DNA of 64,000 bases from Camelus dromedarius (lineage: Eukaryota). Below, in pieces: positions 3,897-57,714 of the stretch. Every line of letters starts with the position of its first letter. Position 1 is the first letter of the stretch. The notes under the pieces were generated by a model. The model was not told the DNA's origin. It worked only from the letters and a program-made list of their open reading frames with translations, and made no database searches. The position numbers and the translations under genes were made by a program. Location: assembly GCF_036321535.1 (NCBI RefSeq), contig NC_087447.1, forward strand, positions 13,020,001 through 13,084,000, read 5' to 3'.

Positions 3897-4829
3897 ATGG
3901 ATAGAGGGAATTGCTCGTCCTTGACTGAATTCATTTTCTTGGGAGTCACTGACAACACTAAAAACAAAGTGACCCTATTCACCATGTTTCTACTTGTTTA
4001 TCTCATTAGTCTCCTGGCCAATCTTGGAATGATCATCCTAATTAGACTGGATTCCCAGCTGCACACACCCATGTACTTTTTCCTCAGCCACCTCTCTTTC
4101 TGTGACCTCGGCTATTCCACAGCAATTGGCCCCAAGATGCTGGTGGACCTATTTGCCAAGAACAGATCAATCCCCTTCCTTGGCTGTGCCCTGCAGTTCT
4201 TGGTCTTCTGCATCTTTACAGATTCTGAGTGTCTCCTGCTGGCAGTGATGGCCTATGACCGGTACAAGGCCATCAGCAACCCCCTGCTCTACACAGTCAG
4301 CATGTCCAGCAGAGTGTGCTCCCTGCTCGTGGCGGGGGTGTACCTGGTGGGGATGGCGGATGCTTTGATACACACGACGTTAGCCTTCCGCTTATGTTTC
4401 TGTGGCTCAAATGAGATTAACCATTTCTTCTGTGATGTTCCTCCTCTCCTACTGCTATCTTGCTCAGATACACAGGTCAATGAGTTAGTGATATTCACCG
4501 TTTTTGGCTTCATTGAACTGAGTACCATTTCAGGAGTCCTTGTTTCTTACTGTTATATTATCCTATCAGTGTTGAAGATCCACTCTGCTGAGGGGAGGCG
4601 CAAAGCTTTCTGCACCTGCACCTCCCACTTAACTGCTGTGGCCATTTTCCAGGGGACTCTGCTCTTTATGTATTTCCGGCCGAGTTCTTCCTACTCTTTG
4701 GATCAAGACAAAATGATCTCACTGTTTTACACCCTTGTGATTCCCATGTTAAACCCTCTAATTTATAGTCTCCGGAACAAGGATGTAAGAGAGGCTCTGA
4801 AAAAACTGAAAAATGAAAGGTGGTTTTAA
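3897..4829 (+). CDS. OR5W2: Olfactory receptor, family 5 subfamily W (OR5W2-like), gene 1, 310 aa, intact
   Basis: Intronless ORF with OR motifs [45 protein letters not shown]. The diagnostic [12 protein letters not shown] and [11 protein letters not shown] match human OR5W2 as I recall it. Orthology is many-to-one. Confidence 0.95.
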
Positions 4830-5489: not shown

Positions 5490-5880
5490 GCCCCAACAGG
5501 GAGGAGCCGTGGGCACTGTGCTAAATGAAGTACGTCAGACAGAGGAAGAGAAGCACTGTCCGGTCTCATGTATCATTTGATTCTAATACAGACTCAGAGA
5601 GAGTGCACACACTTCCTGTTATATGATTAATATGTTCCGGTGATCTAATGGACATGTGACTCTAGTTAACAACGATTTATTAAAATTTGCTAAGAGTAGA
5701 TCTTACATGTTCTCATCACACACACACTAAAAAGGGTAACTATGTGAAGTAAAAAAAATGTGCTAAGTAATCTTATTGTGGAAATCATTTCATAATGTAT
5801 ACATTTATCACATCATCACATTGTATATCTTATAGATCATTTGTCAATTTTATGTGAATAAAGCCAGGAACAAAAGAAGA
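5490..5880 (+). mobile_element. L1MA9/10-type 3' end
   Basis: aaatttgctaagagtagatctta...aatcatttcataatgtatac...tgaataaagc; paralog at 14905-15390. Confidence 0.7.
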
Positions 5881-8960: not shown

Positions 8961-10065
8961 GTGTAAGCAACTGTTAATTTTTTTTAATCTAATAGTTTCC
9001 TGTACCAGATTAAGTATTGATTATATATTTGTGAAATTGGTGTAGTGCATCATTTCATAGAATGTCTCAGTACATAATTAACCTATGTAATAGGATCCAA
9101 AATCCATAATTTTTGGATGAGGGTAGATTGAATGGATGTTAGTCCACAGGGTCTTGAGGAGAAGCACTGTTAAAAACGGAAAGCTAGGTTCCGGCTAAAC
9201 AAAATGCAACTCAAATGGATTTCTGAGTCTCAGAAGACAGAGAAGTTCATGAGGGAAAAATAACTTTGGATGGGAATAGAATTAGGTGACCAAGGATAAT
9301 TCTACATACACCAAATTTGTACCAGAGAGGTAAATAATGATAGTGAAAGTTTGTTGTAACACAAATGCATCAGTTTCTCGATTTTAACTGGTGGAAACTT
9401 ATTATCAATGGGTTATGTATTTTGAGCTTTGCCTCAACAATATCACCATAGGAGTACATTTATTTTAGTTTTGGGAAGATCACTGGGATGATCACATCAA
9501 GAATGGCAATGATATGTAAAAAGACATTGAAAATTGTCATTGACAATCATTTAGACAAAATTTAAAATGTAATGTTATATTAATTTTAGCTTGATGAGTT
9601 TCCTAGTTTTACAGAAAAAAAGGTAGGAAAAAACAAGAAACAAATAAAAGAAATAATCAGAAAAATAACCAAAACAAATAAGAAGAAAACCTGTGTCCCT
9701 GTTAAATCCTAAGCAGATACAGATGAAACAGGAAATTATGTATAGTAACTATTTTTAATTTTAGTTCATTTAACAGATGTTGTCACTTTATTGTCATTAT
9801 CCAAATAACTAAGGATGCTGTGCAAGTTTTTACACATCAACTTACTGTTTATACATCTTCTTGATGAGAGTATTTGTTTAATTACTTTGTATAATTTTTA
9901 TTAAGTTGTTTATTTTCTTATAATTGATGAGAGCTCCTCATATATTTGGGGGACAAGATATATGGTTTTCAAATATTTTCTTCACTCTTTGGGTTATATA
10001 CGTAACAGTTAAAAAAAAACAAAACTCCTGAACATAGTTTCTCTGATGTATTTACCTACACTGTT

Positions 10066-13323: not shown

Positions 13324-14256
13324 ATGGATAGAGGGAATTGCTCGTCCTTGACTGAATTCATCTTCTTGGGAATCACTCATAACACTGAGAACAAAGTGAC
13401 CCTATTCTCCTTGCTTCTACTTGTTTATCTCATTAATCTTGGGGCCAATCTTGGAATGATTGTCCTAATTAGACTGGATTCCCAGCTGCACACACCCATG
13501 TACTTTTTCCTCAGCCACCTCTCTTTCTGTGACCTTGGCTATTCCACAGCAATTGGCCCCAAGATGCTGGCGGACCTATTTGCCAAGAACAAATCAATCC
13601 CCTTCCTTGGCTGTGCTCTGCAGTTCTTGGTCTTCTGTACCTTTGCAGATTCTGGGTGTCTCCTGCTGGCAGTGATGGCCTATGACCGGTACAAGGCCAT
13701 CAGCAACCCCCTGCTCTACACAGTCAGCATGTCCAGCAGAGTGTGCTCCCTGCTCGTGGCGGGGGTGTACCTGGTGGGGATGGCGGATGCTTTGATACAC
13801 ACGACATTAGCCTTCCGCTTATGTTTCTGTGGCTCAAATGAGATTAACCATTTCTTCTGTGATGTTCCTCCTCTCCTACTGCTATCTTGCTCAGATACAC
13901 ACGTCAATGAGTTAGCGATATTCACCATTTTTGGCTTCATTGAACTGAGCACCATTTCAGGAGTCCTTGCCTCTTACTGTTATATTATCCTATCAGCGTT
14001 GAAGATCCACTCTGCTGAGGGGAGGCGCAAAGCTTTCTGCACCTGCACCTCCCACCTAACTGCTGTGGCCATTTTCCAGGGGACTCTGCTCTTCACGTAT
14101 TTCCGGCCGAGTTCTTCCTACTCTTTAGATCAAGACAAAATTATCTCATTGTTTTACACCCTTGTGATTCCCATGTTAAACCCTCTGATTTACAGCCTAC
14201 GGAACAAAGATGTGATAGAGGCCTTAGAAAAATTGAAAAATAAAATATGGCTTTAA
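13324..14256 (+). CDS. OR5W2: Olfactory receptor OR5W2-like, gene 2, 310 aa, intact
   Basis: Paralog of gene 1 with all OR motifs; carries E111G in TM3. Confidence 0.95.
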
Positions 14257-14904: not shown

Positions 14905-15390
14905 TGCCATGACAAGGAAGAACTGTGAGGGCAATATGTTAAGTGAACTAATTCATACAGAGAAAGACAAGTGCTGTATTCTCACATATTTGTAGAATCC
15001 AAAAAGGTCAAACTCATAGAAACAAAGAGTAGATTGGTGGTTGCTAGGGGCTTAACTATGGGGGAAATGGGTGATTTTGATCAAAGTGTACAAGCTTTCT
15101 CTCATTTTATGAGTAAGTTATGAGGACCTAATATACATCCGTGCCTCTAGTTAACAATGCTGTATTCTACACTTGAAATTTGCTGAGAGAGCAGATCTCA
15201 ACTGTCCACACCATGCACACATTAAAAGTGCTACCTCTGTGAGGTGATGAATGTATTAACTAACCTTATTGGGGTAATCATTTCACTATATAAACATATA
15301 TAACATCATCGCATTGTATACTTTATAATTTTACATGCTACTTGCCAATTATATTTGAATAAAGCTAGACAAAAAAGAAGAAGAAAAGAA
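14905..15390 (+). mobile_element. L1MA9/10-type 3' end, unit 2 copy
   Basis: Paralog of 5490-5880. Confidence 0.7.
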
Positions 15391-25211: not shown

Positions 25212-25631
25212 NNNNNNNNNNNNNNNNNNNNNNNNNNNNNNNNNNNNNNNNNNNNNNNNNNNNNNNNNNNNNNNNNNNNNNNNNNNNNNNNNNNNNNNNN
25301 NNNNNNNNNNNNNNNNNNNNNNNNNNNNNNNNNNNNNNNNNNNNNNNNNNNNNNNNNNNNNNNNNNNNNNNNNNNNNNNNNNNNNNNNNNNNNNNNNNNN
25401 NNNNNNNNNNNNNNNNNNNNNNNNNNNNNNNNNNNNNNNNNNNNNNNNNNNNNNNNNNNNNNNNNNNNNNNNNNNNNNNNNNNNNNNNNNNNNNNNNNNN
25501 NNNNNNNNNNNNNNNNNNNNNNNNNNNNNNNNNNNNNNNNNNNNNNNNNNNNNNNNNNNNNNNNNNNNNNNNNNNNNNNNNNNNNNNNNNNNNNNNNNNN
25601 NNNNNNNNNNNNNNNNNNNNNNNNNNNNNNN
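25212..25631. other. Assembly gap (420 N)
   Basis: Run of N. Confidence 1.
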
Positions 25632-27204: not shown

Positions 27205-27805
27205 TATCCCTAGAAAAAAATTTATTGAAATGTATCTCATGTCACAAAAAATACTAAAAAAGATGCAGACCAAGAATAGTGATATCATACTGTTCATTAT
27301 TTTTAAATCTGAGAAATGTTCATTGTTTCTGAATTTAATACAGTGTCTTAAACAAATCATGATTCTTAAAGAACTCAGCAAATGTAATCATTTTCATGCC
27401 CAACTGGGTATTTATTTTACGAGTGTAAGACTATGTACATATTCCAGCTTTGTCTTTAGGTTAAGTGTTGTTTTCATACCATATTGACCTGCAGTCATCT
27501 TTTGGTTCATGACTGATTACTGAGATAAAGCGGTGAAGGTTCACACAATCCACAGTCCTCATGGATAACATCCAAATTTAGAGCCAAGCTTACTCAAACT
27601 CCTGTTCCAGGCACTTTAACTTTTGTCAACAACGTAACAATGAAACTTGTCTGGGCTATTTTATAAGGATAAATCACACAAAAATATAATGTACTGTAAT
27701 AAATGCTTTCTGATTTACAGATTATATTTTTCTGAATCTCAAGAGGTGTTAAAACTTTCACATTTTCTTGATCATTTCTGTAGCATGTTAGAAGAAGAAT
27801 GAAGA

Positions 27806-27919
27806 ATATGTGGAGAAAATGAATCTTCTTTAAGTGAATTCCTTCTCTTGGGAATTAGTAATAACCCTGGGATCAAAGTGACGCTATTTACATTTCTAGT
27901 TGCCTGTGTCATTATTGTT
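27806..27919 (+). pseudogene. 5'-only OR5W remnant (gene 4-like); start codon ATG>ATA; rest of the CDS deleted
   Basis: Reads [38 protein letters not shown], matching the gene 4 N-terminus. Upstream 27.2-27.8 kb aligns with 42.15-42.64 kb. Homology stops at about 27919. Confidence 0.85.
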
Positions 27920-28619
27920 AGTGAAAAATACAATGTCCAAGTAAGACATCATCAGTGTCTACATGTAATATCCACGTATAATGCAGTATTACACGTCAGT
28001 TCCTTCATCCTAGTTCTGTCCACCTGCCCAGGCAACGGCCTCCCTAAACACGAGCATAGCCAGTGGTGACACATTAGGGTACATGTGCAATTAGCCACAT
28101 ACAAAAAAAAAAAACTACTATTCTTCACTCTTTTAATAAGCGTGTGACTCTTTCTTAAGAGGCAGCAAATATAATCTAGCTTGATATCTTCTTTAGAAAC
28201 ATGCTATGACCTAGAAAAACAATGACAACAATACGGTGTTGGAATGTTCCTTCAACTCACCATAACTGTGGCTTACAACACACCATTTTTACTTTTTTGG
28301 CTTCAGTTTCCACTCTGTCCCAAGAGGGATTTGAACTGGATAATCTTTATTGTACATTGTAGCTACCACATACTGTATCTATGTTGATTTGATTTTATCA
28401 ATGAATAATGCACAAACCTACATTTGGGGAGATAAAAGAGAATAACAGATGGGTGGGAATTTATTTATACCAAAGGACTGCATTACATTTCTAGGCCAAT
28501 TTGACCCAAAATGGAAGTGGTAATGATGATAGAAAAAAATAGCTTAGGCTGCATGAGCCTTAATGCTATCAAGATGTATCTGTTCTGCATTTTGATTTTA
28601 AGAGACACTTCGTAAAAAT

Positions 28620-29330
28620 GGATATCCACATTTTTCAGTCATCAGGGAAATCGTGTAATCTACACAATGGCTGAAATTAAAATGACAGACAACATGGAGC
28701 ACTGGTTAGGATGTGAAATAGCCAGAACACTCACTCACTGAAAATGTGATAGTGGAAGCATGCGTTTCTATAATTCTTTGGAAAACAGTATGGTGATATT
28801 TAAACTTTATACACACACGGGTGCACACACGTTTGAATCCTAGTTTTATACACAAGATAAATGACTGCATCTCTAACAAAAGACAAGTACAAGAATATTC
28901 ACACTAACATTATTAGTAATACAAAAAAGGGGGGAATATCCTCAACTGCCTATCAACATTAAAGTAGATAAATAAATAATGATATATTTGTACAAAGTTT
29001 TACTATTCAACAAGAAGCATGAATGTCCTGAAATTCAAGCAACAGCAGGGATGGTTTGCACAGGTATGTTGTTGAGTGAAACGGTACATTCTATAAGCAT
29101 CCACTTTTGTGTGGTTCAAAAAAATACAAAACTAATCAATCATAATAAAAGTCAAGAAAGTGTTTACTTCTTGGCGATAAGAGATCAGCAATTTAGGGAG
29201 GGACATATAGAAGGCTTTGTTGATTCTGGAAATTTTATATTTTTTGGTCTGGGTCCTGACTACAAGGCTAATTTTTTTGAAGATGTATGTGTGTTAATTT
29301 AAGGATTCTCTGCAAGTACATTACACATCA
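28620..29330 (+). mobile_element. Old L1M(E) fragment
   Basis: Degenerate L1 3' motifs (ggaaatcgtgtaat...atggctgaaattaaaatgacagac...ttggaaaacagtatgg). Confidence 0.5.
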
Positions 29331-29899
29331 GAAACATTTTCCAAAAGCAAATATTCACCATTAGATTACAAGTGACTTCAGAATTTTGTTAATATAAACT
29401 ATTATCTTTAGATATTCTTTATACATAAAAGTGTATATTTTTAGAAAATGAACAGTGTGACTTTCATATTTAGTTAGTGAATAATGATCTCTTTTGTTAT
29501 TGTAAATGCAAAAATATCTTATTTGACTCATGAGCACTCAATATTTTTTCCAGCAACACGAAGTCTTAATGAACTTGTTTGCCTTGGTACCAATTATCAG
29601 GCCCAGAACTCAGGGCCACACAATTATTTTCCAAAGGTCGGTGTTCAGAAGTAGACAGTTACGTATAAAGTGTTCCATGTAGAGGCACAGTGGCACAGGG
29701 GAAATCATACAGACACAGATTTTTTTCTCCCTTGCTTGTCTCTGATGTATTAAATTCCAACTATGTGATTCTCTCCTGTGATGTAAGAAAGCCAACTTCA
29801 AGTCAAACTAAAACCCTTTAAGAAGTTAATTATCCATTTTTTAAAAAAAATAATAATACAGCTACTGCAGCTCATTCCCCCATAATGGAGGAAAGTCAC

Positions 29900-30650
29900 C
29901 CTAAATGGTCTGCAGGGGCAGTCATGTTTAGGAAGCTAAATTTAGGTGCTGTCTCAGCAGAGTGAAACCCAAAGAGATTTGTCATCCCTGGAGACAGAGA
30001 AGCACCTGATGCAAAAATGAGTTTGAAAAGGAGTCAGAATAAAACTACCAAGGAAACCCCATCCTTCAAACATGCAGCCAGAGAAGCAGTTAACGGCAGG
30101 AAAGCCCTTGGGTGACACAAACATATCAGCACCTTCAGTTCAATACGTGTCAAAGTATTATAATTACTTAGTTTGAGTTAGGTCTCAACAATGTCACTTA
30201 TAACAGTCAATTAAATATATTTGTAAAGAAATTGTCACTCAAATAATTACTCTAATTAGTCATCACTCTAATTAACTGCAATTAGGCAACAATTAATATA
30301 TCACGAAGGTACCCTTTACCACATATCAAGAAGACTTTATTTTAATGATTTTGGCCAACAGTGTGTTCTACCTTTATAAGATCTCGAAAAAAATCTAGGT
30401 CCCTGTATAGCTCCCAGTGAGGTTTCAGAAGAAACAAATTCCCTGGAGTATTTGTAAACACACTCTAGCTTAATACTCATCCCTTCATCAATTACTTTGT
30501 GCACATTCAAAATTTCACTTTACCTCTTTTTCTAGTAAAGAAATTAATTAACTGCAGTAAGGCAGAACCCATAGTAGGAACACATTATTGTGTGTTTCAT
30601 TCAGGAGTAGAAATTAACAGATACATAGAAAGTTGTGCTTCTCAGCATCC
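29900..30650. promoter_or_regulatory. Candidate OR enhancer (dense homeodomain and EBF sites)
   Basis: Five TAATTA/CAATTA sites in 30244-30295, further sites at 30161, 30208 and 30545, TTTTAATGA 30340-30348, EBF-like TCCCTGGAGA 29985-29994 and TCCCTGGAG 30440-30448. Confidence 0.4.
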
Positions 30651-30794
30651 TGAAATGATTCATGTATTTTAAAGTATCACTCAGAATGTGGCCAAAAAAA
30701 TAGTGTATCCCCTAAGGCTGCCATGTTGCACAACTTCAGGGGCAACATTTTACTTATTTCCTTGTCCTCCCTGGATTTGGGCGGTACAGTGTTT

Positions 30795-31087
30795 ACTTGA
30801 TACATTTATACATTGGAATTTAATTACCACCATATCTTTAGTTAACACCCACATCAGTCACATAATTATTGTCCATTTCTTGTGATGAGAACATTTAAGA
30901 TCTAGTCTGTTAGCAACTTTAAGGTATATAATAACAGTATTGTAACTAATCACAACGCTGTGTGTTAGATCTCCAGAGCTAAATTCATCTTACAACTGCA
31001 AGTTTGTACACTTTAACCAATAGCTCCTCAATTCCTCCACCCCCAGCCCCTGGCAACCACCATGCTATACTCCGTTTCTATGAGATC
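30795..31087 (-). mobile_element. L1MA-type 3' end
   Basis: gtgatgagaacatttaagatcta...ttagatctccagagc...cccagcccctggcaaccacc. Confidence 0.75.
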
Positions 31088-31392
31088 GTCACACAGAAGT
31101 TTTTTCCGAAACAAAGGAACCTTGGCTTTTCTTTTTTTTAAACCGTATCCCAACACATTTTTTATAGACCATCCTTGTACTTATCAACTATATTAGTAAA
31201 GCGCCTTCAAAGGCTATTTATTTCAATTTTTTTTGGAACTTCTACCAGTGTTATCACCAGAGATAGGGGACATCCCCTATCCAAACAACATTATCAAGTA
31301 ATAATGTTAAAATACTTAATAACACTCATTTACTGAGTTGTTACTCATGGAAATCTTATGCTAAGGATGGCTGAAATGTACCAAGACACGGA

Positions 31393-31857
31393 CAGTCATA
31401 CCTTGGAGATACCGCAGGTTGAGTTCCAGGCCACCATGATAAAGTGAATATTCCAACAAAGAGAAGCAGGCAATTTCTGGTTTCCAAGTACATATGAAAG
31501 TTACATTTACACCATACTGCAGTCTATTCAGTATGCAATAACACTAGCTCTAAAAAAAAAAGGTAATACTATAATTAAAAAATACTTTATTGACAAAAAA
31601 AAAAGCATTTGAGCTTTCAATGAGTGGTAGTAATAACATCAAAAATCACCAATCACAGATCACCATTACAAATATATTAATGATGAAACAGTTTGGAAAT
31701 TGTGACAATTAGGAAAATGTGACACATTGCCATGAAGTGAGCAAATTCTGCTGGACACGCAGTGCTAACAGACTTGCCTGACATAGGGCTGCCACAAGCC
31801 TGCAATTTGTAAAAAACCACAATTATCTGCAAAGCACGATAAAATGAGGTATGCCTG
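31393..31857 (-). mobile_element. Internally deleted Tigger1-type DNA transposon
   Basis: Terminal inverted repeats CAGTCATACCT and AGGTATGCCTG; internal Tigger1-like sequence. Confidence 0.8.
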
Positions 31858-31918
31858 TGAATGAATGAAGTACATTGTTCAATAAAGAGTGTGCTGTGTG
31901 TGATGGATGTTTTACAGT

Positions 31919-32410
31919 TGAAGGAGAACAGAATACGCCCCTCCAAAATATGCCACTTTGGCTTAATAATTATTTTTAATTCACAATCCTTAAGAAACAG
32001 CTGGTGGAAAAGGGACCCCCTGACCCTCCTCTGTGTCTCTGAAGGCAGGAAATCAATGTCCTGTGTGAAGTTTCCCCTCCTTGTGCCAGAAAGGTAGAAA
32101 GCATTCATAGCACCAGAAACAGGGAATTAAGGGCCAAGAAGGCTGCATAACCAAACCTTGTTACTACTTTACTGGTAGTAACCAGCGTAATCCCCTTTGT
32201 CCCATCAATTCATCACAACTTTAATGTTTTCTTGTCTAAAAGGAATAAAAGCTGCCTGCTTTGGGCACTTTGCATGTCATTCTTTTTATGAGACCCCTAT
32301 ATGTAGAAAATTAAACTCATTTTTCTCCTGTTACTTTGTCTTATGTCAATGTAATTATTAGGCTAGTGAGAGAACTAGAAGGAAAGAAGGGAATGTCTTC
32401 TGTACCTACA
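31919..32410 (+). mobile_element. MER34-like solo LTR
   Basis: Starts TGAAGGAGAACAGAATACGCCCCTCCAAAATATGCC and ends tacctaCA. Confidence 0.7.
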
Positions 32411-32721
32411 TAATCAAAAAAATCATTGAAATAAGGGTGATTGACATGTACTCAGGGGAAAGACTCAGACAATGACTAATGGTCAAATCAGTATGTAAGA
32501 TGATCAAATCTCGGAATGAGAACTGAAGTTTCAGAAATGGAGGAAGTTGGATGACAAATGAAAAGGAGAAGAAAGTCATTAGCACAGAATCTAGCTTCAC
32601 TGGAGGAGAGATTTACAGTAGCCATGAAGCATGACATTAAACTCTGGTAAATTTCTGACATCGATTTGGTGAAAAGAATAAAGAATTAAAAGGTCAGCCT
32701 TTGCTCAAGTCACTGCAGCAG

Positions 32722-32903
32722 TCACAAGAGAAAATACAGAAACAGAAACCTAATTCCTCATGTTCTCATAACACAAAAACGCAAGGATGGAGGCTCTAGA
32801 GATTTAAGTCCCAACAGTCACTAGACAGAAATAAAATGCGATCTGCCTACTGTATACGGACCGGAGAAAAAAGGACAGAAAGCCTCGCTCATTTCAGGTA
32901 GGT
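32722..32903 (+). promoter_or_regulatory. Orphan OR5W2-type promoter module (no own CDS downstream)
   Basis: Homologous to 41.14-41.40 kb. TCACAAGAGA 32722-32731, TAATTC 32751-32756, donor CAG|GTAGGT at 32898. Confidence 0.55.
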
Positions 32904-33339
32904 TTCTAAATGGCTAAATTTAAAGCATATGGGAAAGGAGGTAAACCTCACTTTTATGGAAAAGTGAAGAATCAAGTATTGGGGATGTGTAAATGAATCA
33001 TTTTATGCCTGCTTACTTAGTTAGTTAAATACCACAATCTAGTAACCAAATACAATGGCAACTTCTGAAATTCCTCTCCAGAAATTTGCTTATGAACCAG
33101 ACACCCAGTGCCACTCTGAGTCACTGTAGCATTTAACAACTCACTCTTCCCTGCTAGACTTCAGCCCCTTCTCTGTAAAAGAAAACCTGTCTCTACGTAT
33201 CTGTGATCTACTCCTGTGCAAACCTACCCCCACAATCGGAGGTATTAAACACATAAAACTTTTAAAAACACCGAAAACAGACCTCTTTCATCACCACACA
33301 AAAGAATTGCTTAGTATCTCAAGGCTGATTTGACTTGAA

Positions 33340-33470
33340 ATGGCAATAATAATGGTATTATATGTAATAATAATCATGATAATAATGTATGTTATAATAT
33401 GTAATAATATGTGATAAGAATAATTATAATAACAATAATATAATATATATGTTATTATAATAATGCTATA
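33340..33470. repeat. AT-rich low-complexity (TAA)n-like tract
   Basis: Degenerate ataat repeats. Confidence 0.8.
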
Positions 33471-33521
33471 AATGAGGAAATGAGCTGTAGAAGACCAAAT
33501 ACTCTTAAACCCAACACCTTT

Positions 33522-33564
33522 TTTTAAAAACATTTTTTTTTTATTGAGTTATAGCCATTTTACT
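33522..33564 (-). mobile_element. Extremely truncated camelid L1 3' tip with 10-bp TSD
   Basis: ttttattgagttatagccattttac flanked by caacaccttt at 33512-33521 and 33565-33574. Confidence 0.7.
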
Positions 33565-36315
33565 CAACACCTTTAACTGGGCCCCAATTTGACACCCAGA
33601 CTTTAGTAGACTTATCATAGAAATGCGTGTACAACTTTTTTCTGTATGCAGGTAAATAAAACTGTAAAACTCAGTCAGATTGTAGACAATGGCAGCATTT
33701 CATTCTTTTTCACTCTTTAGCAGATCCTGGTACGCAGTGTTTTTCAATATATTCTTGTAAAATTAGTAAAGCATATAATTTTCATAGATTTATGAGTTTC
33801 AAATAGCAATGAGTATGCTTTATGTTACTGAAAAGCACTGTTTTACTTATAGAACAGAGATGTTTAGCAAGCCAAGCAATGTTGTCTTGTTTTAGGCAAC
33901 AGGGACCTAGTAAACCTAGCTTTTCTGGGTTCCATTATTACGCACTGAATTTATAGGATAATGGTCCATGCCTCTGGGCCAGACAACCATTTTCTGGAAG
34001 AAGGTGAGCAAAAGCAAACCTTTGCCTGCTTAGTGTTAGGTTTAGGAGCACCAATGAGACCAGAACAAAACACATAGACACAGATTTATTTCTAGTGTCT
34101 TAACTGCTACCTAATGTCTTCCCCTGAGCTATTCTCTGTTAACATACCAGCTTTGGGGAAGTAATTTATAATCTGATTTTTCAGCGATACATTACTACCC
34201 ACATTCCAGATTGAATGGCGAGTGGGAGATGAACTACGTGGTTCATGAGATTGCAGCCTGCGCCCTGCTAACAAGGACAGCCTGGGGGACTTAGCGCCCC
34301 TCGGGATGCGGAAGCACCTGAGGGAAACATGAGTGTGGGAAGGCACCAGAAGGCGGTCACCAAGGATGACTCTGTCTCCTTCAAATATGCACCAGAGAAG
34401 AAGGGAATGACAGTACAGTTCTGGGCATCACAAGTCTATCATGGGGTTATGATTTCCTGATGGAAAATGACCAGCAATTTCTTAGGTAATTTCAGAGTTG
34501 CCGCAACAATTTCTCCCACAGGAGGACATTAGGTATTTTACTATTGGGCACATCACTCAAAAAATAACAATGCGTTAGAAAAAGACGTTAAAACTGGTAC
34601 TAGAATCATTTTTCCAAAAATTAAAAATATACTAATTTCATCAAATTTTGCCTGAAGAGTATTCTGACTTTATAGAAAGCAGAAAGAAAGTCCATAACAG
34701 CAAACAATACAAATTAGTATACAGAAGCAGCTGCAAACCTGCGTTTCTGTCTACTCAAAGCTAATCTTTGGGGGAAAAAAATGAAACTACCTGACATATT
34801 ACAATACATAAACTGCATGCCCTGCACACTGTTTCTTGTGTTTTTTTTTTTACACAAATTTTAAATTTACAGGTCTGTGGCAGTTAAATTAACTGCAGTA
34901 AGATTAAAGATGCGCAGCTAATGTACATGGTTATTGTACATTTCGGGGAACATTTATCCACTGTGTTCATTTAAAGAACACACAGCAACCTATGCTTGTA
35001 CGTGTAGTGCAATGATTTATATATAATAAAACATTTTCAATAAATGGTCAATACAGTGATTATCCCCCTAACATCAAGGGATTCCAGCTTGTTCAGTTTC
35101 TATCTGATTCCTGAGACTTTCCAGTGAAGCCAGCCCCCCACAGCATCTTCACTTCACACTGACATTTACTATGTTCCAGTGTCCAGGTGATATGAATAGA
35201 GCAGATCACCTCCCAACGTGAACATCTTTCCTATTTGCTCCCCTCTGCCATCAGCCAGTCAAAGCTGGGATCCCACCTTGGTTTAGAAGTGGGACTTGAA
35301 TGGTCTCTCAGTTCTCTAAGAAATCTCAGAGTCTATGGGTTATTAATTTTATGAGTTTTCAAAGTCACTTTAACATAAACATACCGCAACAGTCTATGAG
35401 GCTTTTTAGGAGAGTTGTATTGTAAGACAGATTTGTTTACTGCACTGTATTCAGGAATCCGTTTTGAGTAATTTTGATGCGTCAGAGAAACAATGTCTAC
35501 AGGACTACAGAAGTTTAGTTATCATCTCTGGGTTTCAGTTTCTCTATCATAGAGTGAGGTTGTCAGAAACAACTCAGGACATATGTGATAACATAAAATA
35601 CATGATGTATGAGGTGATAATTAAATATGAGTTGGTAAAAAGGCCCAAATTGCCTCTATTTAAAATCAAATCTCTTTGCATTTAAAAGCCATTGCTTAGA
35701 GTTATTTTAAAGAAAGACCAGATAAATTGTGTATGTATAATTTTACTCATATCAGGAGTTTTATGATATAAAAATTGTATATTAATCAGATGCTCATTAG
35801 CAAAGGACAGAATGAATAAATGCATGTACATCAGTAGAAAGACTACATCGGCTATGTTCATAATATCTATATGTATAAAATATGTTTGTTTTGATGTCAA
35901 TTTTGTTTAAAATGTTAAAATGTCATAATATAGAAAATAAAACTAGTTATCCCTAAGAGCTGTATGTTTATGATTATTTTCTTGCTGTGTTTACAAAAAA
36001 ATGTTTTACCTGTAAATGTGTTTAATGGGCTAGAGTTTGTGCATGTGTGTCCACGGAAGTGTGAGTGTGAGTGACCGTGGCTTTGTTTTTTAAATTATGG
36101 AATTAAAACAAAATGTCTGTATAGAGATTTCTGAGCTGAAAATAAGGACCACTCATTGACCGGACTCATTTTACTATTGTTAAATAAATATAATTGGGCA
36201 GGAAGGTAGAGAGGACAAAAGTAATATTTTCTGAGTTCTGGTTTTTTTTTTTTCTCAGTCACCCTGCCTGTAAGAGATAACAGATGATAGACATACTATT
36301 ATATTTGTCACTTAT

Positions 36316-38182: not shown

Positions 38183-39121
38183 ATGGCTGCGGAGAACTGC
38201 TCTGTGTCTGCTGACTTCACGTTCCTGGGACTTTCTGGCAGGAGAGATGTGCAGCTGGGGCTCTTCGTGCTCTTCCTGCTGGTTTACGGCATCACTGTGA
38301 TGGCCAACCTAGGGATGATCCTGCTGATCAAGGTGGACCCCAGACTCCACACGCCCATGTATTATTTCCTGAGCAACCTGTCCTTCTGTGACATCTGCTA
38401 CTCCTCCACTGTCTCTCCCAGGATGCTGACTGATTTCCTATCGGAGCAAAAGAGGATTCCATACAATTTGTGTGCCATCCAGATGTTTTTCTTTGGAACC
38501 CTTGCAGATGTGGAATGTCTCATGTTGGCTGTCATGGCTTATGACCGCTATGTAGCCATTTGCAACCCACTACTGTACACAGTCACCATGTCCAGGAGAA
38601 TCTGTACCCAACTTGTGGCTGTCGCCTACATTGTAGGCTTGGTGGATTCGGCAATCCACACCTGTTTCACATTTCAATTGTCTTTCTGCCAGTCTAATAT
38701 CATCAATCACTTTTTCTGTGATATCCCGCCCTTGCTAGCCCTCTCCTCCTCAGACACATCCACAAATGAGATCGTGATGTTCACTTTTATTGGCTGTGTT
38801 GTGGGCTGCAGCATCATCACCGTCCTCCTTTCCTACGGCTACATCATCACCACCATCCTTAGAATGAGCTCGGCACAGGGGAGGCGCAAAGCCTTCTCTA
38901 CGTGTGCCTCCCACTTGACGGCGGTGGCCGTGTTTCACGGCACCCTCCTGTTCATGTACTTCCGACCCAGCTCCAGTTACTCCATGGACACGGACAAAGC
39001 GGCCTCTGTTTTCTACACGGTTGTCATCCCCATGCTAAACCCGCTGATCTACAGCCTAAGGAACAAGGATGTGAAAGGTGCCCTGAAAAAAGCAATCAGC
39101 TCTGAATTATGTTCTGGGTGA
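38183..39121 (+). CDS. Olfactory receptor, second 5W-type subfamily (probably OR5W1-like), copy A, 312 aa
   Basis: [47 protein letters not shown]. Likely splice acceptor ccccaaccag ends at 38163. Confidence 0.93.
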
Positions 39122-41390: not shown

Positions 41391-42645
41391 TTCTGAGCTG
41401 TCAAATGTAAAGAGTGAAAAATAAGGAATCAAATATTTAGAAAATTGCAAGTGAAGATTTTATTGACTTCCTTTGGTTAGTCATCTGCAACCTAGTGGCA
41501 AAAATTACATTTCTCATCAAAGCAGGGTAAGTCAGATTCATTCTGACTAGCAAATGAACAGTTTTGCTTACTTATATCTTAATCAAATTTAAGGAAAAAA
41601 TAGGATTTTTAAAATCTCTGTGAAAGGGTATATGCAAATATAAGACTTTTTTTTCTAATTTTTTAACCAGTAAAAATTGATGTATCACAATACAAATAAA
41701 AATTTGTGTAAATTCAAACCCATATGAACCATGTATCATATTTACTGAGGTCTAATACAAAATCAGACCATCGTTCATATTCCAATTCTTATATATTGAC
41801 AGAGAGTCATGGTGCACATCCACACACACATGCGCACACACGCAGAAGCTTATATCAAAGATGTGTTCATTACTCCAGTTCCCCTCTCTGTGTTTTTAAT
41901 GAACAAGTCAGGTTAAAATCCTAAAGGGCTGTAAATGCATTGGTTAAATTCTGTTGTTTCCACTTGTTTTTAGCATTTCTTTTTATCTGGTCAAGAGACA
42001 TGTCCTTTGGCACCAGAGCACTCTTGAATGTAAGTAATGATCATTTGGCCATGCAGTAAAATAGTAGTAGAGAAAATTTCACTAAAATATAGCTAATGTC
42101 TCAGTAAAACATTAAAACGTAGACCAAAAACAGTAATACCATATTGTTCATTATTTTTAAACCAGAGATAAGTTCATTGTGTTTTTAATATACAGTAATA
42201 AATAAATTATGATTCTTAAGAATTGAGTAAGGATATGAATTTTTATGTTTAATTGGGGATATATATTTTTAAAATATGAGGCTGAATATTCCAGCTTTGT
42301 CTTTAATTTAGGTATTACTTTTATATTATATTTGACCTGTAATGAGCTTTCAGTTATGATTCATGGCTGAGATAAAGCAGTGACGTTTCACACAATCCAC
42401 ACACATCATGGATGACATTCAAATTTAGAGGCAAGCATTCTCAAAATCCTATCCCAGACACTAACTCTTTCCAGTAAATAGCAATGAAATTTGTACGGGC
42501 AATTTTCTGAGAATAAAGTATTTAATGTACTGAAATAAATTATATCTGACTTACAGATTATATTTTGTGTCAAAAAGAGAAAAAACTTGGATCTATCATT
42601 TTCTTGATCATTTCTGGAGCATTTTTAGAAGGAAAATAAAGAAGA

Positions 42646-43581
42646 ATGGATGGGGGAAATTGCTCTCCCTTGAATGAATTCCTTCTCTTAGGAATTAGCA
42701 ATCGCCCTGTGATCAAAGTGACTCTATTTACCACCTTTCTACTTGTTTATCTCATTGTTCTTGTTGCAAATCTTGGGATGATCATTTTAATAAGAATGGA
42801 CTCCCAGCTTCACGTGCCAATGTACTTTTTCCTCAGCCACCTCTCCTTCAGTGACCTCTGCTATTCCACAGCAATTGGACCCAAGATGCTGGTGGACCTA
42901 TTTGCCAAGAACAAATCCATCCCCTTCCTTGGCTGTGCTCTGCAGTTCTTGGTCTCCTGTACCTTTGCAGATTCTGGGTGTCTCCTGCTGGCAGTGATGG
43001 CCTATGACCGGTACAAGGCCATCAGCAACCCCCTGCTCTACACAGTCAGCATGTCCAGCAGAGTGTGCTCCCTGCTCGTGGCGGGGCCGTACCTGGTGGG
43101 GATTATGGATGCTTCTATAAATACAATATTAATGTTCCGCTTATGTTTCTGTGGGTCCAATGAGATTAACCACTTCTTCTGCGATGTCCCACCTCTGCTT
43201 TTGCTCTCTTGCTCAGACACACAGGTTAATGAGTTGGTGATATTTATCATTTTCGGTTGCATTGAACTGATCACCCTCTCAGGTCTTTCTGTGTCTTATT
43301 GTTATATCATCCTAGCAGTGCTGAGGATGCGCTCAGCTGAGGGGAGGCGCAAAGCTTTCTGCACCTGCACCTCCCACCTAACTGCTGTGGCCATTTTCCA
43401 GGGGACTCTGCTCTTCATGTATTTCCAGCCGAGCTCTTCCTACTCTTTGGATCAAGACAAAATGACCTCACTCTTTTACACCCTTGTGATTCCCATGTTA
43501 AACCCTCTGATTTACAGCCTACAGAACAAGGATGTGAAAGAGGCTTTGAAGAAACTTAAAAATAAAAAGTGGTTCCATTGA
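42646..43581 (+). CDS. OR5W2: Olfactory receptor OR5W2-like, gene 4 (mosaic), 311 aa, intact
   Basis: OR motifs are present. The N-terminus and TM4-TM5 are diverged from genes 1-3, but two tracts are near-identical to gene 3. Confidence 0.92.
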
Positions 43582-45675: not shown

Positions 45676-48600
45676 CTTAATAGTTAATAGAAAGTACACA
45701 CAAGGGTTGTAGATAGTAAGGTAATGCATCTATAAAGATATTTATGTTTATTACTCATAAAGTGAAAATTATCCATCTGCATACTTTCTTGATGTGCTCT
45801 GCTTCATCTGGCTTTGTCAGGTTTTTTCTGATGACAAAGCATGTAAACACGGACATGGACGTATAAATGAAGGACCGTGCAAGACTCAGTGACATCCTTA
45901 TTACCCATTAGAATTTCACCTCTTTAGTGATTTTAAACACCCTGTGTGAAATCGTGTCAGAATGGATGTAAAACCCAAGACACTTCTTGCTACTGATGTT
46001 GGCATTTATGGGAAACAAGTGACAATTAGGGGTAAATACAGGGTTGGGAAAAATTATGGGGAATACCTCTTTTAAAAATATGCTAAGATTTTCCATCTGC
46101 ATCATCTTTCATCAGTTTACCCATAGTCTTGTTAATATTTCTTAATAGCTCAGTATGGCAGAAAAAAGAGTTTGAAATATATTAAAGTCCAAAAAATCAT
46201 ACAACTTTCATGGAATATTTAATTAAGTTATTATTCCTTATGTTAGGGAAAAATGCCTAGCTTAGAGAACAGAGATGTTTTTAGCAACTCACAGGTGCTC
46301 CTTTTCTTGTTTCCTGCAACAGGAAGACACGGTAAACCTAGTTTTCCTTGGCAGCATTAACGTGCACTGAACGTGTATGACAACAGCTCATGCCTCAGGG
46401 CCACACAGCCATTTTCTAGAAGAAGGCATTCCTAAGTACAGCTGCCTCGGTGGTATCATATTTACATGAACCAGTGCTACCAGGAAGTCCATACACATAG
46501 AGATTTTTTTTCACTTGTTTTTCTCTAACATCTTAAAACCCACCTTACGTCTCCCTTTCATAGTTAAAGCCATTCTCATTAACACGCAAACGTTTTGGGA
46601 AGCAATTTACTATCCAATGTTCAGTAATATACTGCTCCTCATTTTCTGGATTTGATGGGGGTGGGAGTTAGACTAAATGGCCCCGAGGGGCATCCATGCT
46701 TATGAAGTTACGTTTGGATCCGAACCAAATAGTGTAGCTTGAGGAAGTTCGGCATCCCTGGAGACGGGGACACATCTGAAGGAAAAGTGAGTCAGGAAAG
46801 GAATCAGAGGATGGGGACCAAGGGTATCACTGCCTCCTTCAAATATGCCGTGGAAGTAGAGAATGGAAGTAAAACTCTTAATTACAACAAATATGTAATT
46901 TTCTTATGTGTACCTGATGGATAATTACTAGCAACTTCTTAGTGGCTTGAAAATTGCCCCAACATCTCCCTCAGGAATGCATTTGATAGTTCAGTACTGG
47001 GACCATGACTCAAAGAACAGCAACACATTATGAAAAGGCAGTAACAGTTGTCACTAAAGTCACTTCTCCCAAAATCATAAATATATTGATTTCATTGAGT
47101 TTTGCCTGAAGATTATTCTAGCTTTATAGAAAGCAAGAGGCAACTGCATAACAGCACACAACAAAAAGTCAACAAAAATAGCTTCAAAAATCTAAGTCCC
47201 TGTTTACTCTAGGCCAGGTTTCAGAAGAAACAGGAGACCACCCGGAGTACTGGAGTGCCTAAACCCAGCATGTCTTGTACATCTTACTTTTCTTGTTTGT
47301 TTGCACAAGTTTGGCATTTCTGTGACAACTAGGTGCATTAAGACTCAAGATGTATGGCTGATATGTGATTATTGCACATTTTTGGGGAAAACGTTTATCA
47401 ACTGCAGGCATTTAAGGAACACGTGGCACCTGCACTTACAAGTTTACAGCCGTGATTCACACACGTGCTAAAATATTGCTCAATAAATGGACAGGGCAGA
47501 TATTATTTCCTATACTGCCAGGTTGCACGATGACAAAGAGCCCCAATTTCCTTATTTTCTATATGATTTCTGAAACTGGGCAATGCAGCCTCCCCCTCCA
47601 TACGTCATTCTTCACACCAAGGCTAACTGTGTGCAAGTGTCCAGGTGACATAAATGAAACAGATCACCTCCCGATGAGACTCCCTTCCTCTTGGCTCCCC
47701 TCTGCCATCCGTCGCGTTGGGACCCCACACTGGCTTAGAAATGGGACTTGGGTGGCCTCTCAGTCCTCTCAGAAGTCTAGGCATCTACAGGTTCCTGATT
47801 TTGTGTGTCTTCAGTTGTTACTTTAACATAAACATAGTCCAACATCCTATAAGAACATTTAAGGGAGTTATCTTTTAAGACAAATTTGTTTCAATAAAGT
47901 CAGTAAAGCTTAATGTCTAGGAGACCCTGGAATTTTACTTATCATCTGTGGGTCTCAATTTCTATCTCAAAAACAAGATCATTAGAGACAATTCAGGACA
48001 TCTATGATTATATACATATATATAACACATGATAGCATGTGGTCATAATTTGATAAACATCGTATTGTATGAAACATCATACGGTGAAAAGGCCAAAATT
48101 GCATTTGTTTAGGTAAATCTCTTTTCTTTTAAAGGTCATTTATGGAATTTATTTTAAAGATATGATAAATTATGTAAGTATAATTTTACTCACATCAGCA
48201 TTTTATGATACGAAGTATTGCATATAAACCAATGGCCTTTGGCGGGTATGCTTAATACTTATTTATATGCACAAAGCATATTTATTCTGACATCATTTTG
48301 TTTAAAAATTAAAAATGCAAAAATATAGATAACAGAATATGGTTACTCATAGGCATTGTGATTCAGGACTTTTTTTTTTTTTTTTGCTCTATTTACAAAA
48401 ATCTTTTCTTTGTGAATATGCTTAATAGGAAAGAGTTTGTATATGTGGGACTCTGTCCGTGTGTTAAAGTGAGTGGGTGTGGCTTTTTGTTGTTGTTGTA
48501 AATTATAGAATTAAAAACAAAGTGCCTATATGTAGTTTGGTGAAGGGACGTAAGGAATGCTGGTTTACTGGAGACACTTTACTATTGCTAAATACGTAGA

Positions 48601-50676: not shown

Positions 50677-51615
50677 ATGGCTGCAGAGAACTGCTCTGTG
50701 TCTGCTGACTTCACGTTCCTGGGACTTTCTGGCAGGAGAGACGCGCAGCTGGGGCTCTTCGTGCTCTTCCTGCTGGTTTACGGCATCACTGTGATGGCCA
50801 ACCTAGGGATGATCCTGCTGATCAAGGTGGACCCCAGACTCCACACGCCCATGTATTATTTCCTGAGCAACCTGTCCTTCTGTGACATCTGCTACTCCTC
50901 CAATGTCTCTCCCAGGATGCTGACTGATTTCCTATCGGAGCAAAAGAGGATTCCATACAATTTGTGTGCCATCCAGATGTTTTTCTTTGGAACCCTTGCA
51001 GATGTGGAATGTCTCATGTTGGCTGTCATGGCTTATGACCGCTATGTAGCCATTTGCAACCCACTACTGTACACAGTCACCATGTCCAGGAGATTCTGCA
51101 CCCAGCTAATATCCATTGTCTACGTGGAAGGCTTGGTGGATTCGGCAATCCACACCTGTTTAACATTTCAATTGTCCTTCTGCCAGTCTAATATCATCAA
51201 TCACTTTTTCTGTGATATCCCGCCCTTGCTAGCCCTCTCCTCCTCAGACACATCCACAAATGAGATAATGTTGTTCATTTCTAGTAGCTGTGTTGTGGGC
51301 TGCAGCATCATCACCGTCCTCCTTTCCTACAGCTACATCATAACCACCATCCTTAGAATGAACTCGGCACAGGGGAGGCGCAAAGCCTTCTCTACGTGTG
51401 CCTCCCACTTGACGGCGGTGGCCGTGTTTCACGGCACCCTCCTGTTCATGTACTTCCGACCCAGCTCCAGTTACTCCATGGACACGGACAAAGCGGCCTC
51501 TGTTTTCTACACGGTTGTCATCCCCATGCTAAACCCGCTGATCTACAGCCTAAGGAACAAGGATGTGAAAGGTGCCCTGAAAAAAGCAATCAGCTCTAAA
51601 TTATGTTCTGGGTGA
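50677..51615 (+). CDS. Olfactory receptor, second 5W-type subfamily (probably OR5W1-like), copy B, 312 aa
   Basis: Paralog of copy A with 19 aa differences by hand count. Confidence 0.93.
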
Positions 51616-57125: not shown

Positions 57126-57714
57126 TCTCTGCAGAGCTCCTGGGCTTCTGAGGTCGCAACAGAGTGATGACGCCAGTATGGACAATAACCTCAACATCAA
57201 CATGGTTAAGATAATTAGAAGAGTAATTCTCAGTCCACTGGGGCATCCTGATAGCACCTAGGCACATCTAAAGTATAATATAATACGTAGAATTTCAATT
57301 TTTTTGAATAAAATTGATAATTACTTACTTCTATTCCTTGAAGCTATTTTCTACATTGACTGATGCACCATCAAACCAGCAGGTGAACTCCAATGCTGGG
57401 CTTCACTCTTACTGACTTTGACCCTCTCCACATTCACCAATGTCAGGTGATGGCGGTTCGCCACATTGGTGTATAGCGAACTCTGAGCAACTAGTCTCTG
57501 TTCCCCTTTGTGGTTTTTGTTTTGTTTTTGTTTTTAAGTTTACTAATAAAAGCATGGCCATTCCAGGTGAAGCCTTGTATAGATAGAGCTACGGATATTC
57601 TATATTTCTCACCTTGAGATGTGGCTTTGCCTCAGAGGATAAAAGGAACTTCTTAGAGTTGCTTGAAATCCACTGATAGAAAGAGGAAAGACTCGGAGTT
57701 AGTTCTTTAAGGAG

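What the first reader, a model, noticed from the sequence alone, without database searches (positions are those of the whole stretch)
29900..30650. Gene-less homeodomain/EBF-dense block: candidate OR enhancer derived from an orphaned upstream region
Seen: five Lhx2-type cores in 52 bp (TAATTA 30244, 30253, 30269; CAATTA 30279, 30290), partly built from a repeated actctaatta unit. More lie at 30161, 30208 and 30545. There is a TTTTAATGA core at 30340-30348 and EBF-like sites TCCCTGGAGA (29985) and aattCCCTGGAG (30440, directly after AATT). The flanks align with the upstream regions of ORs A and B (34.1-34.95 kb, 46.6-47.4 kb), but those copies lack the homeodomain cluster, and this copy has no CDS. 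Established: OR enhancers (H, P, Greek islands) are short Lhx2+EBF motif clusters inside OR arrays; the P element resembles an OR promoter; AACTTTTTAATGA is the H/P homeodomain motif. Inference: an upstream region that lost its gene may have become, or kept, a cluster enhancer.
Basis: partly seen in the sequence, partly recalled or inferred. Interest (0 to 1): 0.7.

Follow-up and report, generated by a model that had tools for sequence, protein, structure and literature searches.

The report
Orphaned smell-receptor promoter copy with homeodomain array
This gene-less stretch in a camel smell-receptor gene cluster is an old leftover copy of the control region that normally sits a few kilobases upstream of such genes, and a small camelid-only tandem duplication gave it an unusually dense row of homeodomain binding sites; whether it still regulates anything is untested.

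Summary
All the motifs are at the stated coordinates. Five Lhx2-type cores in 52 bp is the densest such cluster in 264 kb of this OR cluster, and it never arose in composition-matched simulations.

The block (29882-30662) is a collinear homolog of an ~800-nt module lying 3-6 kb upstream of OR5W2-like coding regions in camel, hippo, cow, zebra and stoat. It has no coding region of its own, so the "orphaned upstream region" reading is supported.

New here:
- **Age.** The orphan is old. Alpaca, wild camel and warthog carry an ortholog at the same position, 8.3-8.5 kb upstream of the same OR.
- **Conserved core.** The best-conserved part is a 5' GC-richer core (29903-30011) with an O/E-like site and an E-box. 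It is 92% identical to warthog, against about 75% for neighbouring DNA.
- **Origin of the cluster.** The eye-catching TAATTA cluster comes largely from a 29-bp camelid-specific insertion, a degenerate tandem duplication absent in warthog and all paralogs.
- **No composite motif.** No 1-bp-spaced Lhx2-Ebf composite motif, the Greek Island hallmark, is present.

Camel-alpaca conservation is compatible with neutral drift. No RNA or chromatin data could be brought to bear. Enhancer function remains possible (about 40% for any cis-regulatory role, about 10% for a true Greek Island) but is unproven.

The parts
29882..30662 (+). Block C: orphaned copy of the OR5W-family upstream (promoter-type) module
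   Evidence: nhmmer profile hit, E 1.5e-193. Collinear alignment with A-up and B-up and with hippo and cow modules. Orthologs in alpaca, C. ferus and warthog.
29903..30011 (+). Conserved 5' core and local GC peak. Holds a MEF2-like CTAAATTTAG (29936-29945), an O/E-like TCCCTGGAGA (29985-29994) and an E-box CACCTG (30003-30008).
   Evidence: Four camel-warthog identical runs of 20-27 nt. 92% identity over 100 nt, the best non-coding window in 11 kb. It is the only part of C that BLAST aligns to the gene-linked modules. GC is 44-52% here in all copies.
30161..30166 (.). TAATTA core conserved to warthog
   Evidence: Lies inside the 15-nt identical run 30159-30173.
30240..30297 (.). Homeodomain array: five Lhx2-type cores (30244, 30253, 30269, 30279, 30290) forming a degenerate tandem array
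   Evidence: sequence. TRF period 26, 2.3 copies, score 56. Identical in alpaca and C. ferus.
30248..30276 (.). 29-bp camelid-specific insertion carrying cores 30253 and 30269 and completing 30244
   Evidence: Absent in the warthog ortholog and in A-up, B-up, hippo and cow modules. The boundaries depend on the alignment by a few bases.
30286..30301 (.). GCAACAATTAATATAT: the CAATTA 30290 core inside a run conserved to warthog
30337..30352 (+). TTATTTTAATGATTTT: a TAATGA-type homeodomain site matching 9 of 13 positions of the H/P extended motif, conserved to warthog
   Evidence: The H/P and J motifs are quoted in PMC7804114.
30373..30381 (+). TATA-like TTTATAAG, shared by most copies of the module
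   Evidence: Alignment A3, columns 503-510. Function is inferred.
30440..30449 (+). Second EBF-like site TCCCTGGAGT, overlapping the preceding AATT
   Evidence: 2 mismatches to TCCCNNGGGA. Conserved in alpaca but not in warthog.
30545..30550 (.). TAATTA core: one overlapping core lost in alpaca, a TAATTA retained in warthog
34276..35020 (+). A-up: gene-linked paralogous module, 3.2-3.9 kb upstream of OR A (38183)
   Evidence: nhmmer, E 1.8e-197.
46656..47470 (+). B-up: gene-linked paralogous module, 3.2-4.0 kb upstream of OR B (50677)
   Evidence: nhmmer, E 2.1e-227.
9130..9743 (+). More distant copy of the module, 3.6-4.2 kb upstream of the X-type OR at 13324
   Evidence: nhmmer, E 5.6e-58.
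27812..28033 (+). OR pseudogene fragment (X-type, residues 3-78) of the same decayed duplication unit
   Evidence: tblastn. 27211-27927 aligns to 42068-42770.

Best explanation
**What it is (shown).** The block is an orphaned copy of the promoter-type module that lies 3-6 kb upstream of OR5W2-like coding regions.
- Its own receptor gene was deleted before camelids and pigs diverged.
- The copy has stayed at the same place, 8.3-8.5 kb upstream of OR A, ever since.
- Its 5' core is the best-conserved part. That core is the local GC peak and carries an O/E-like site and an E-box.
- In the camelid stem lineage a 29-bp tandem duplication, plus a few point changes, turned a stretch with one strict core (as in warthog) into five Lhx2-type cores in 52 bp.

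**How it most likely works (inferred).** If it acts at all, it acts like the P element, as a promoter-derived local cis element.
- Ebf would bind at the conserved O/E-like core, and Lhx2 or Emx2 at the homeodomain sites.
- This would raise the choice probability of nearby receptors, chiefly OR A 7.5 kb downstream. It could do so as a local enhancer or as an alternative distal promoter or first exon.
- The camelid array would add Lhx2 valency, much as synthetic multimerised homeodomain sites do.
- It is not a canonical Greek Island, because the composite motif is missing.

**Odds.** The origin story I hold at about 0.85. Any present-day regulatory activity I hold at about 0.4.
For: **Homology and orphan status:**

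**Orthologs:**
- Alpaca: 96.4% identical over the block, with the cluster 52/52 identical.
- C. ferus.
- Warthog at the same distance from the A-type OR.
- The C clade has 100/100 support in the trees.

**Conservation against warthog:**
- The 5' core is 92% identical over 100 nt and 84% over 171 nt, against 0.745-0.757 in the flanks.
- Identical runs coincide with the MEF2-like site, the O/E flanks, the E-box, TAATTA 30161, CAATTA 30290 and TTTTAATGA.

**Promoter-like architecture:**
- The GC peak falls at the core in every copy.
- This fits the published description of OR promoters: AT-rich, GC peak at the TSS, with O/E, HD, MEF2 and TATA motifs (PMC12547500).

**Origin of the array:** tandem, lineage-specific.

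**Precedents in the literature:**
- The P element was found by its similarity to an OR promoter (PMC12547500).
- Multimerised homeodomain sites raise the number of OSNs choosing a linked OR about 40-fold. The H core has 3 TAATGA sites in 92 bp (10.1101/2022.05.05.489571).
Against: - There is no transcript, accessibility or binding data. No RNA run holds the block, and the single read-laying run gave only same-species DNA contigs.
- That the gene-linked module is a promoter is inferred from position and motif content. It is not shown.
- Camel-alpaca identity of the block (96.4%) is only in the top ~15% of non-coding windows. Twenty longer identical runs exist in the same 21 kb.
- Adjacent DNA that looks like an old L1 fragment reaches 86-89% identity to warthog in 100-nt windows. 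Neutral identity is therefore overdispersed, and the core's 92% is suggestive rather than decisive.
- Only 3 of 9 strict cores are conserved in warthog.
- The O/E-like site itself varies: TCCCTGGAGA in camel, TCCTTGGAGA in alpaca, CCCCAGGAGA in warthog.
Confidence: 0.45

Rival explanations
1. Inert relic. The block is a decaying fossil of a duplicated OR upstream region. The motif cluster is a by-product of replication slippage in AT-rich DNA, and the conserved runs reflect a locally low substitution rate.
For: - The cluster is a tandem duplication specific to camelids.
- Camel-alpaca conservation is compatible with neutral drift.
- The whole 29.2-31.6 kb neighbourhood, including repeat-derived DNA, is more conserved than the DNA nearer OR A: 8.6-11.5 identical runs of 13 nt or more per kb, against 4-5.
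- Six of the nine strict cores are not conserved in warthog, three of them because the insertion is absent there.
- No composite motif is present.
Against: - The 5' core reaches coding-level identity to warthog and is the top non-coding 100-nt window.
- The same core is the part retained across all gene-linked copies in five lineages.
- Three of the five longest conserved runs 3' of the core contain homeodomain motifs.
Confidence: 0.42
2. Greek Island-type enhancer. The block would be an intergenic Lhx2+Ebf-bound element that escapes heterochromatin, joins the interchromosomal enhancer hub and activates ORs in cis and in trans.
For: - It is intergenic, inside an OR array.
- It has the highest Lhx2-core density in 264 kb.
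- Two EBF-like sites lie within 750 bp.
- It is an old element with a conserved core.
Against: - The composite motif (Lhx2 site, 1 bp, Ebf site) is the family hallmark. It scores above 5 in 55 of 63 islands and is depleted from promoters (PMC5608512; PMC11643329).
- Here only the very loose published pattern hits, and at background frequency (4.2 per kb). Its one hit with a good Ebf half has a degenerate Lhx2 half.
- A spacing-aware scan finds none in the block.
- The nearest strict Lhx2 core to the better O/E site is 170 nt away.
- The second EBF-like site is not conserved in warthog.
Confidence: 0.1
3. Interspersed repeat, low-complexity DNA or assembly artefact.
For: TRF reports a short tandem array. 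Repeat-like DNA starts about 100 nt downstream of the block (depth spike at 30766-30847; inverted copies at 5602-5720 and 15013-15213).
Against: - The whole-genome DNA search finds only the block itself.
- The profile finds copies only upstream of ORs.
- An independent run and three other species carry the same sequence.
Confidence: 0.03

Closest known systems
P element of the mouse P2/P3/P4 OR cluster (promoter-like OR enhancer)
   Same: [quoted passage not shown] Here the similarity is true homology to gene-linked upstream modules.
   Different: Only 9 of 13 positions of the extended H/P motif AACTTTTTAATGA are present (TTTTAATGA). There is no deletion or reporter evidence. The promoter status of the parent module is inferred.
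Greek Islands (Lhx2/Ebf/Ldb1-bound OR enhancers, Monahan et al. 2017)
   Same: Location in an intergenic stretch of an OR cluster, a size of a few hundred bp, and Lhx2-type and Ebf-type motifs.
   Different: No stringent composite motif. The homeodomain sites are far denser than usual, and most are lineage-specific. Binding and accessibility are unknown.
Synthetic multimerised homeodomain enhancer (x21, 4x21/5x21 transgenes)
   Same: Four to five closely spaced homeodomain sites produced by tandem repetition of a short unit. In transgenes this raises OR choice probability about 40-fold (10.1101/2022.05.05.489571).
   Different: The natural array uses TAATTA/CAATTA cores in a degenerate ~26-bp (or 16-bp) unit, not the 21-bp TAATGA unit. 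Its spacings are 9, 16, 10 and 11 bp. It lies 7.5 kb from the nearest intact OR rather than next to a promoter.
OR proximal promoters (Clowney 2011, Plessy 2012, as summarised in PMC12547500)
   Same: AT-rich context with a local GC peak, an O/E-like site, homeodomain sites, and MEF2-like and TATA-like motifs.
   Different: There is no linked coding region and no mapped TSS.

Membership tests
Greek Island OR enhancer | Intergenic position inside an OR gene cluster | tested here: met
   ORs flank the block for at least 100 kb on both sides. There is no coding sequence between 28033 and 38183.
Greek Island OR enhancer | Composite Lhx2-Ebf motif with about 1-bp spacing (strong in 35/63 islands, permissive in 55/63) | tested here: not met
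   A spacing-aware scan (TAATKR followed, 0-3 nt later, by a site with at most 2 mismatches to TCCCNNGGGA) finds none in the block. The loose fuzznuc pattern of PMC11643329 hits at background rate. The HOMER matrix itself was not available, so no score could be computed.
Greek Island OR enhancer | Close juxtaposition of separate Ebf and Lhx2 motifs | tested here: inconclusive
   The weak EBF-like site at 30440 lies 40 nt from CAATTA 30489. The better O/E-like site at 29985 lies 170 nt from the nearest core. Published island distances range from 0 to 638.
Greek Island OR enhancer | Lhx2 and Ebf co-binding, and accessibility within H3K9me3 heterochromatin in mature OSNs | not testable with these tools
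   No camelid olfactory ChIP or ATAC data could be reached.
P-element-like promoter-derived enhancer | Sequence similarity to an OR upstream or promoter region, including HD and O/E motifs | tested here: met
   Collinear homology to modules 3-6 kb upstream of OR5W2-like coding regions in camel, alpaca, hippo, cow, zebra and stoat. That these modules are promoters is inferred.
P-element-like promoter-derived enhancer | Extended homeodomain motif AACTTTTTAATGA | tested here: not met
   Only TTTTAATGA (9 of 13) is present at 30340-30348, and the 5' part differs.
P-element-like promoter-derived enhancer | Deletion lowers expression of neighbouring ORs, or reporter activity in OSNs | not testable with these tools
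   Needs an experiment.
OR proximal promoter | AT-rich region with a GC peak, an O/E site, and HD, MEF2 and TATA motifs | tested here: met
   against the criteria in PMC12547500.
OR proximal promoter | A transcription start and a linked OR transcript | tested here: inconclusive
   No RNA run holds the block. No coding region follows within 7.5 kb.
Interspersed repeat (transposable element) | Many dispersed copies in the genome | tested here: not met
   The own-genome DNA search returns only the block. Profile hits occur only at OR-upstream positions. No Dfam or RepeatMasker library was available.

The most novel reading that the evidence does not exclude
A naturally multimerised homeodomain array, created by a 29-bp tandem duplication in an orphaned OR promoter module, acts in camelids as a high-probability choice element. 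It would be a natural counterpart of the synthetic x21 multimer, and it would bias olfactory neurons towards the neighbouring OR5W2-like receptors. That would show how new OR enhancers are born from promoters of dead genes.
Probability: 0.12. Interest if true: 0.65.

Novelty: new member of a known kind. Interest (0 to 1): 0.38.

Why it matters
OR enhancers are known almost only from mouse, and how they originate is unsettled. The P element hints that they can derive from promoters. This locus offers a dated, stepwise example:
- a promoter-type module that lost its gene at least as early as the common ancestor of camelids and pigs,
- a 5' core that stayed well conserved, and
- a homeodomain array gained later in camelids through one small tandem duplication.

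If the block is active in olfactory neurons, then comparing the camel version, the warthog version and a version with the array deleted would test directly whether homeodomain valency tunes receptor choice in a natural element. If it is inert, it is a caution: striking Lhx2-site clusters in AT-rich OR clusters can arise from a single slippage event.

Tried and rejected
- **Cross-species check through public reads.** Both sequencing-run runs returned only same-species or near-identical holders. The single read-laying run gave short same-species contigs for two runs and only repeat-derived pieces for the other two. This gave no divergence information and no RNA evidence.
- **Own-genome DNA search** for further copies found only the block itself. 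It is too insensitive for ~68%-identical paralogs, so a local nhmmer profile replaced it.
- **Rfam scan** of 28000-35500 found nothing.
- **Direct look-ups** of the alpaca OR A ortholog (P0007) and of an unannotated alpaca ORF failed. I reached the alpaca block instead by walking gene to gene.
The real-DNA background is therefore 264 kb of OR cluster plus about 125 kb from other species.
- **Conserved splice donor.** I looked for one that would mark a first exon (GTGAGT after the E-box, CAGTAAG at ~30556). Neither is conserved across copies, so no exon model is offered.
- **'aattCCCTGGAG' as a composite motif.** Rejected: the homeodomain half overlaps the Ebf half instead of lying 1 bp away, and the site is not conserved in warthog.
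- **My first dinucleotide-shuffle script** hung. Markov simulations replaced it.

Full report
**Setting.** The window is a camelid OR5W2-like receptor array.
- The best protein hits are Camelus and Vicugna "olfactory receptor 5W2".
- Intact ORs start at 3897, 13324, 23053, 42646 ("X-type", 83-92% identical to each other), at 38183 and 50677 ("A" and "B", 94% identical), and at 57257 on the minus strand.
- No OR coding sequence lies between 28033 and 38183. A fragment of an X-type OR (residues 3-78) lies at 27812-28033.

**The observation.**
- Counting TAATTA, CAATTA and TAATTG on both strands, the window has 110 cores (1.7 per kb). The five cores at 30244-30295 are the densest cluster.
- Five in 52 bp never arose in 5000 Markov simulations of the block or of its AT-rich centre. 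The maximum in 300 whole-window simulations was four.
- In 264 kb of real DNA from this cluster (window plus 100 kb each side) it is the only place with four or more cores in 52 bp.
- The cluster is real sequence. An independent run carries 30118-30459 without a difference, and C. ferus and alpaca have it unchanged.
- The statistical surprise is smaller than it looks, because the sites are not independent. TRF reads 30240-30297 as a degenerate period-26 array of 2.3 copies, and a 13-nt direct repeat recurs at a spacing of 16.

**What the block is.**
- It aligns collinearly over about 800 nt with 34276-35020 and 46656-47470, which lie 3.2-4.0 kb upstream of the start codons of ORs A and B.
- A profile built from these copies finds the same module upstream of A-type ORs in four other species. 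It lies 3.1-3.9 kb upstream in hippo and zebra, 5.5-6.3 kb in cow and 4.1-5.1 kb in stoat.
- A more distant copy lies 3.6-4.2 kb upstream of the X-type OR at 13324.
- It finds nothing else in 264 kb of camel DNA. The whole-genome DNA search finds only the block itself. The block is therefore a family-specific upstream module, not a transposon.
- The surrounding order shows a decayed duplication unit in which the receptor gene that once followed the block was deleted. In sequence it reads: X-upstream and X fragment (27211-28033), the block, a piece of X-upstream DNA (32660-32925), and then the A-linked module from 33814.
- The "orphaned upstream region" inference is supported.

**Is the parent module a promoter?** This is inferred, not shown. 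In every copy the 5' 200 nt is a local GC peak (44-52%) in AT-rich DNA. It carries an O/E-like site and is followed by homeodomain-type and TATA-like motifs. That matches the published description of OR promoters: AT-rich, a GC peak at the TSS, an O/E site within a few hundred bp, and HD, MEF2 and TATA motifs (PMC12547500). I found no conserved splice donor and no RNA data, so I offer no exon model.

**Age and conservation.** I reached orthologous DNA by looking up OR orthologs and walking along the alpaca chromosome.
- *Alpaca.* Alpaca is collinear with camel 28215-49150 at 94.7% identity.
  - The block is 96.4% identical and the five-core cluster is 52/52 identical.
  - This is only the top ~15% of non-coding windows, and 20 longer identical runs exist in the same 21 kb.
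  - Within camelids the test has little power, and the result is compatible with neutral drift.
- *Warthog.* The informative comparison is warthog.
  - An ortholog of the block lies 8.5 kb upstream of the warthog A-type OR, against 8.3 kb in camel, in an 11-kb collinear alignment.
  - In trees the warthog copy groups with the camelid copies at 100/100, apart from all gene-linked modules.
  - The orphan therefore predates the camelid-suid split.
- *Other species.* Hippo, cow, zebra and stoat show only the gene-linked type within 10 kb of the genes I sampled. Whether they lost the orphan or carry it elsewhere is open.

**Camel versus warthog in detail.**
- Well-aligned non-coding DNA is 74.5-75.7% identical. 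The block is 77.5%, its 5' core (29930-30100) 84%, and 29912-30011 92%. That last window is the best non-coding 100-nt window and equals the best coding windows.
- Identical runs of 20-27 nt tile the core around the MEF2-like CTAAATTTAG, the O/E-like site and the E-box.
- Further 3', three of the five runs of 13 nt or more contain TAATTA 30161, CAATTA 30290 and TTTTAATGA.
- Against this, DNA just downstream (30.7-31.0 kb) reaches 86-89% in 100-nt windows. It behaves as a high-copy repeat, has inverted copies, and from memory I recognise it as an L1 3' fragment.
- The whole 29.2-31.6 kb neighbourhood is richer in conserved runs than the DNA nearer OR A.
- I therefore rate constraint on the core as suggestive, and on the homeodomain sites as weak. 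Three of nine strict cores are conserved.

**Origin of the dense cluster.**
- Warthog, camel A-up and B-up, hippo and cow all lack a 19-29-nt segment present in camelids (30248-30276 relative to warthog). That segment carries cores 30253 and 30269 and completes 30244.
- Core 30279 is CAATAA in warthog. Only 30290 is shared.
- Hippo and cow have one TAATTG at the corresponding place.
- The stretch thus went from about one core to five through one small tandem duplication plus a few substitutions. This happened after the split from pigs and before camels and llamas diverged.
- Core counts per module are 9 (camel C), 8 (alpaca C), 3 (warthog C), and 0-4 in gene-linked copies.

**Comparison with known OR enhancers.**
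- Greek Islands are defined by Lhx2/Ebf co-binding and are strongly enriched for a composite motif with the two sites 1 bp apart. That motif is depleted from promoters (PMC5608512; PMC11643329; PMC12547500).
- The block has no such motif.
  - The loose published pattern hits at background frequency (4.2 per kb).
  - A spacing-aware scan finds none in the block.
- The better O/E-like site (29985) varies at core positions among camel, alpaca and warthog while its flanks are invariant. The alpaca form TCCTTGGAGA equals the Ebf half of the validated Sfaktiria composite.
- The closer analogies are two.
  - One is the P element, which was found through its similarity to an OR promoter.
  - The other is the synthetic multimerised homeodomain enhancer, which raises the number of neurons choosing a linked OR about 40-fold. 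The H core has three TAATGA sites in 92 bp.
- In the 2017 mouse list the large chr2 85-90 Mb cluster has only one island, at 90.4 Mb. From memory, that cluster holds the OR5W relatives. I could not test synteny.

**Verdict.**
- The enhancer reading is neither confirmed nor refuted. I put about 0.4-0.45 on some present cis-regulatory role (local enhancer or alternative promoter of OR A), about 0.1 on a true Greek Island, and about 0.42 on an inert relic.
- The feature that made the block conspicuous is a young, single-event tandem duplication.

Noticed in passing
about 5060 bases before the window start (G000:C12, near 13014940): GCTAATTGTTCCCTAGGAGTC: a TAATTG followed, after one base, by an Ebf-like TCCCTAGGAG. 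It is the best 1-bp-spaced composite-like site in 264 kb of this cluster and lies about 3 kb upstream of an OR of another subfamily.
   Followed up: partly
window 25212-25631 (N run) and L002:10921-20213: Between the sequences flanking this N run, the alpaca assembly has about 7.6 kb more DNA than the camel assembly, including an intact X-type OR (L002:17599-18528). I did not read or fill the camel gap.
   Followed up: no
window 30700-31084, also 5602-5720 and 15013-15213 (inverted): A high-copy repeat fragment directly downstream of the block. Read depth spikes 10-fold at 30766-30847. From memory it looks like an L1 3' end. It is orthologous in warthog and unusually well conserved there (86-89% in 100-nt windows).
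   Followed up: partly
window 38183-39121 vs 50677-51615: ORs A and B are 91-99% identical per 200-nt step over the first 800 nt of the coding region (82% in the last step), but their flanks are only 65-87% identical.
   Followed up: partly
window 29576-29596 (minus strand): TAATTG G TACCAAGGCA: a near-composite site 300 nt upstream of the block. It fails the published loose pattern at one position. It has one change in alpaca and is poorly conserved in warthog.
   Followed up: yes
L007:12086-12170 (hippo): A second natural cluster of four Lhx2-type cores in 52 bp, about 1.1 kb downstream of a hippo A-type OR. It shows that such clusters recur in OR-cluster DNA.
   Followed up: no
window 29936-29945: MEF2-like CTAAATTTAG inside a 23-nt run identical in camel, alpaca and warthog. 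It is absent from the gene-linked copies of the module.
   Followed up: no
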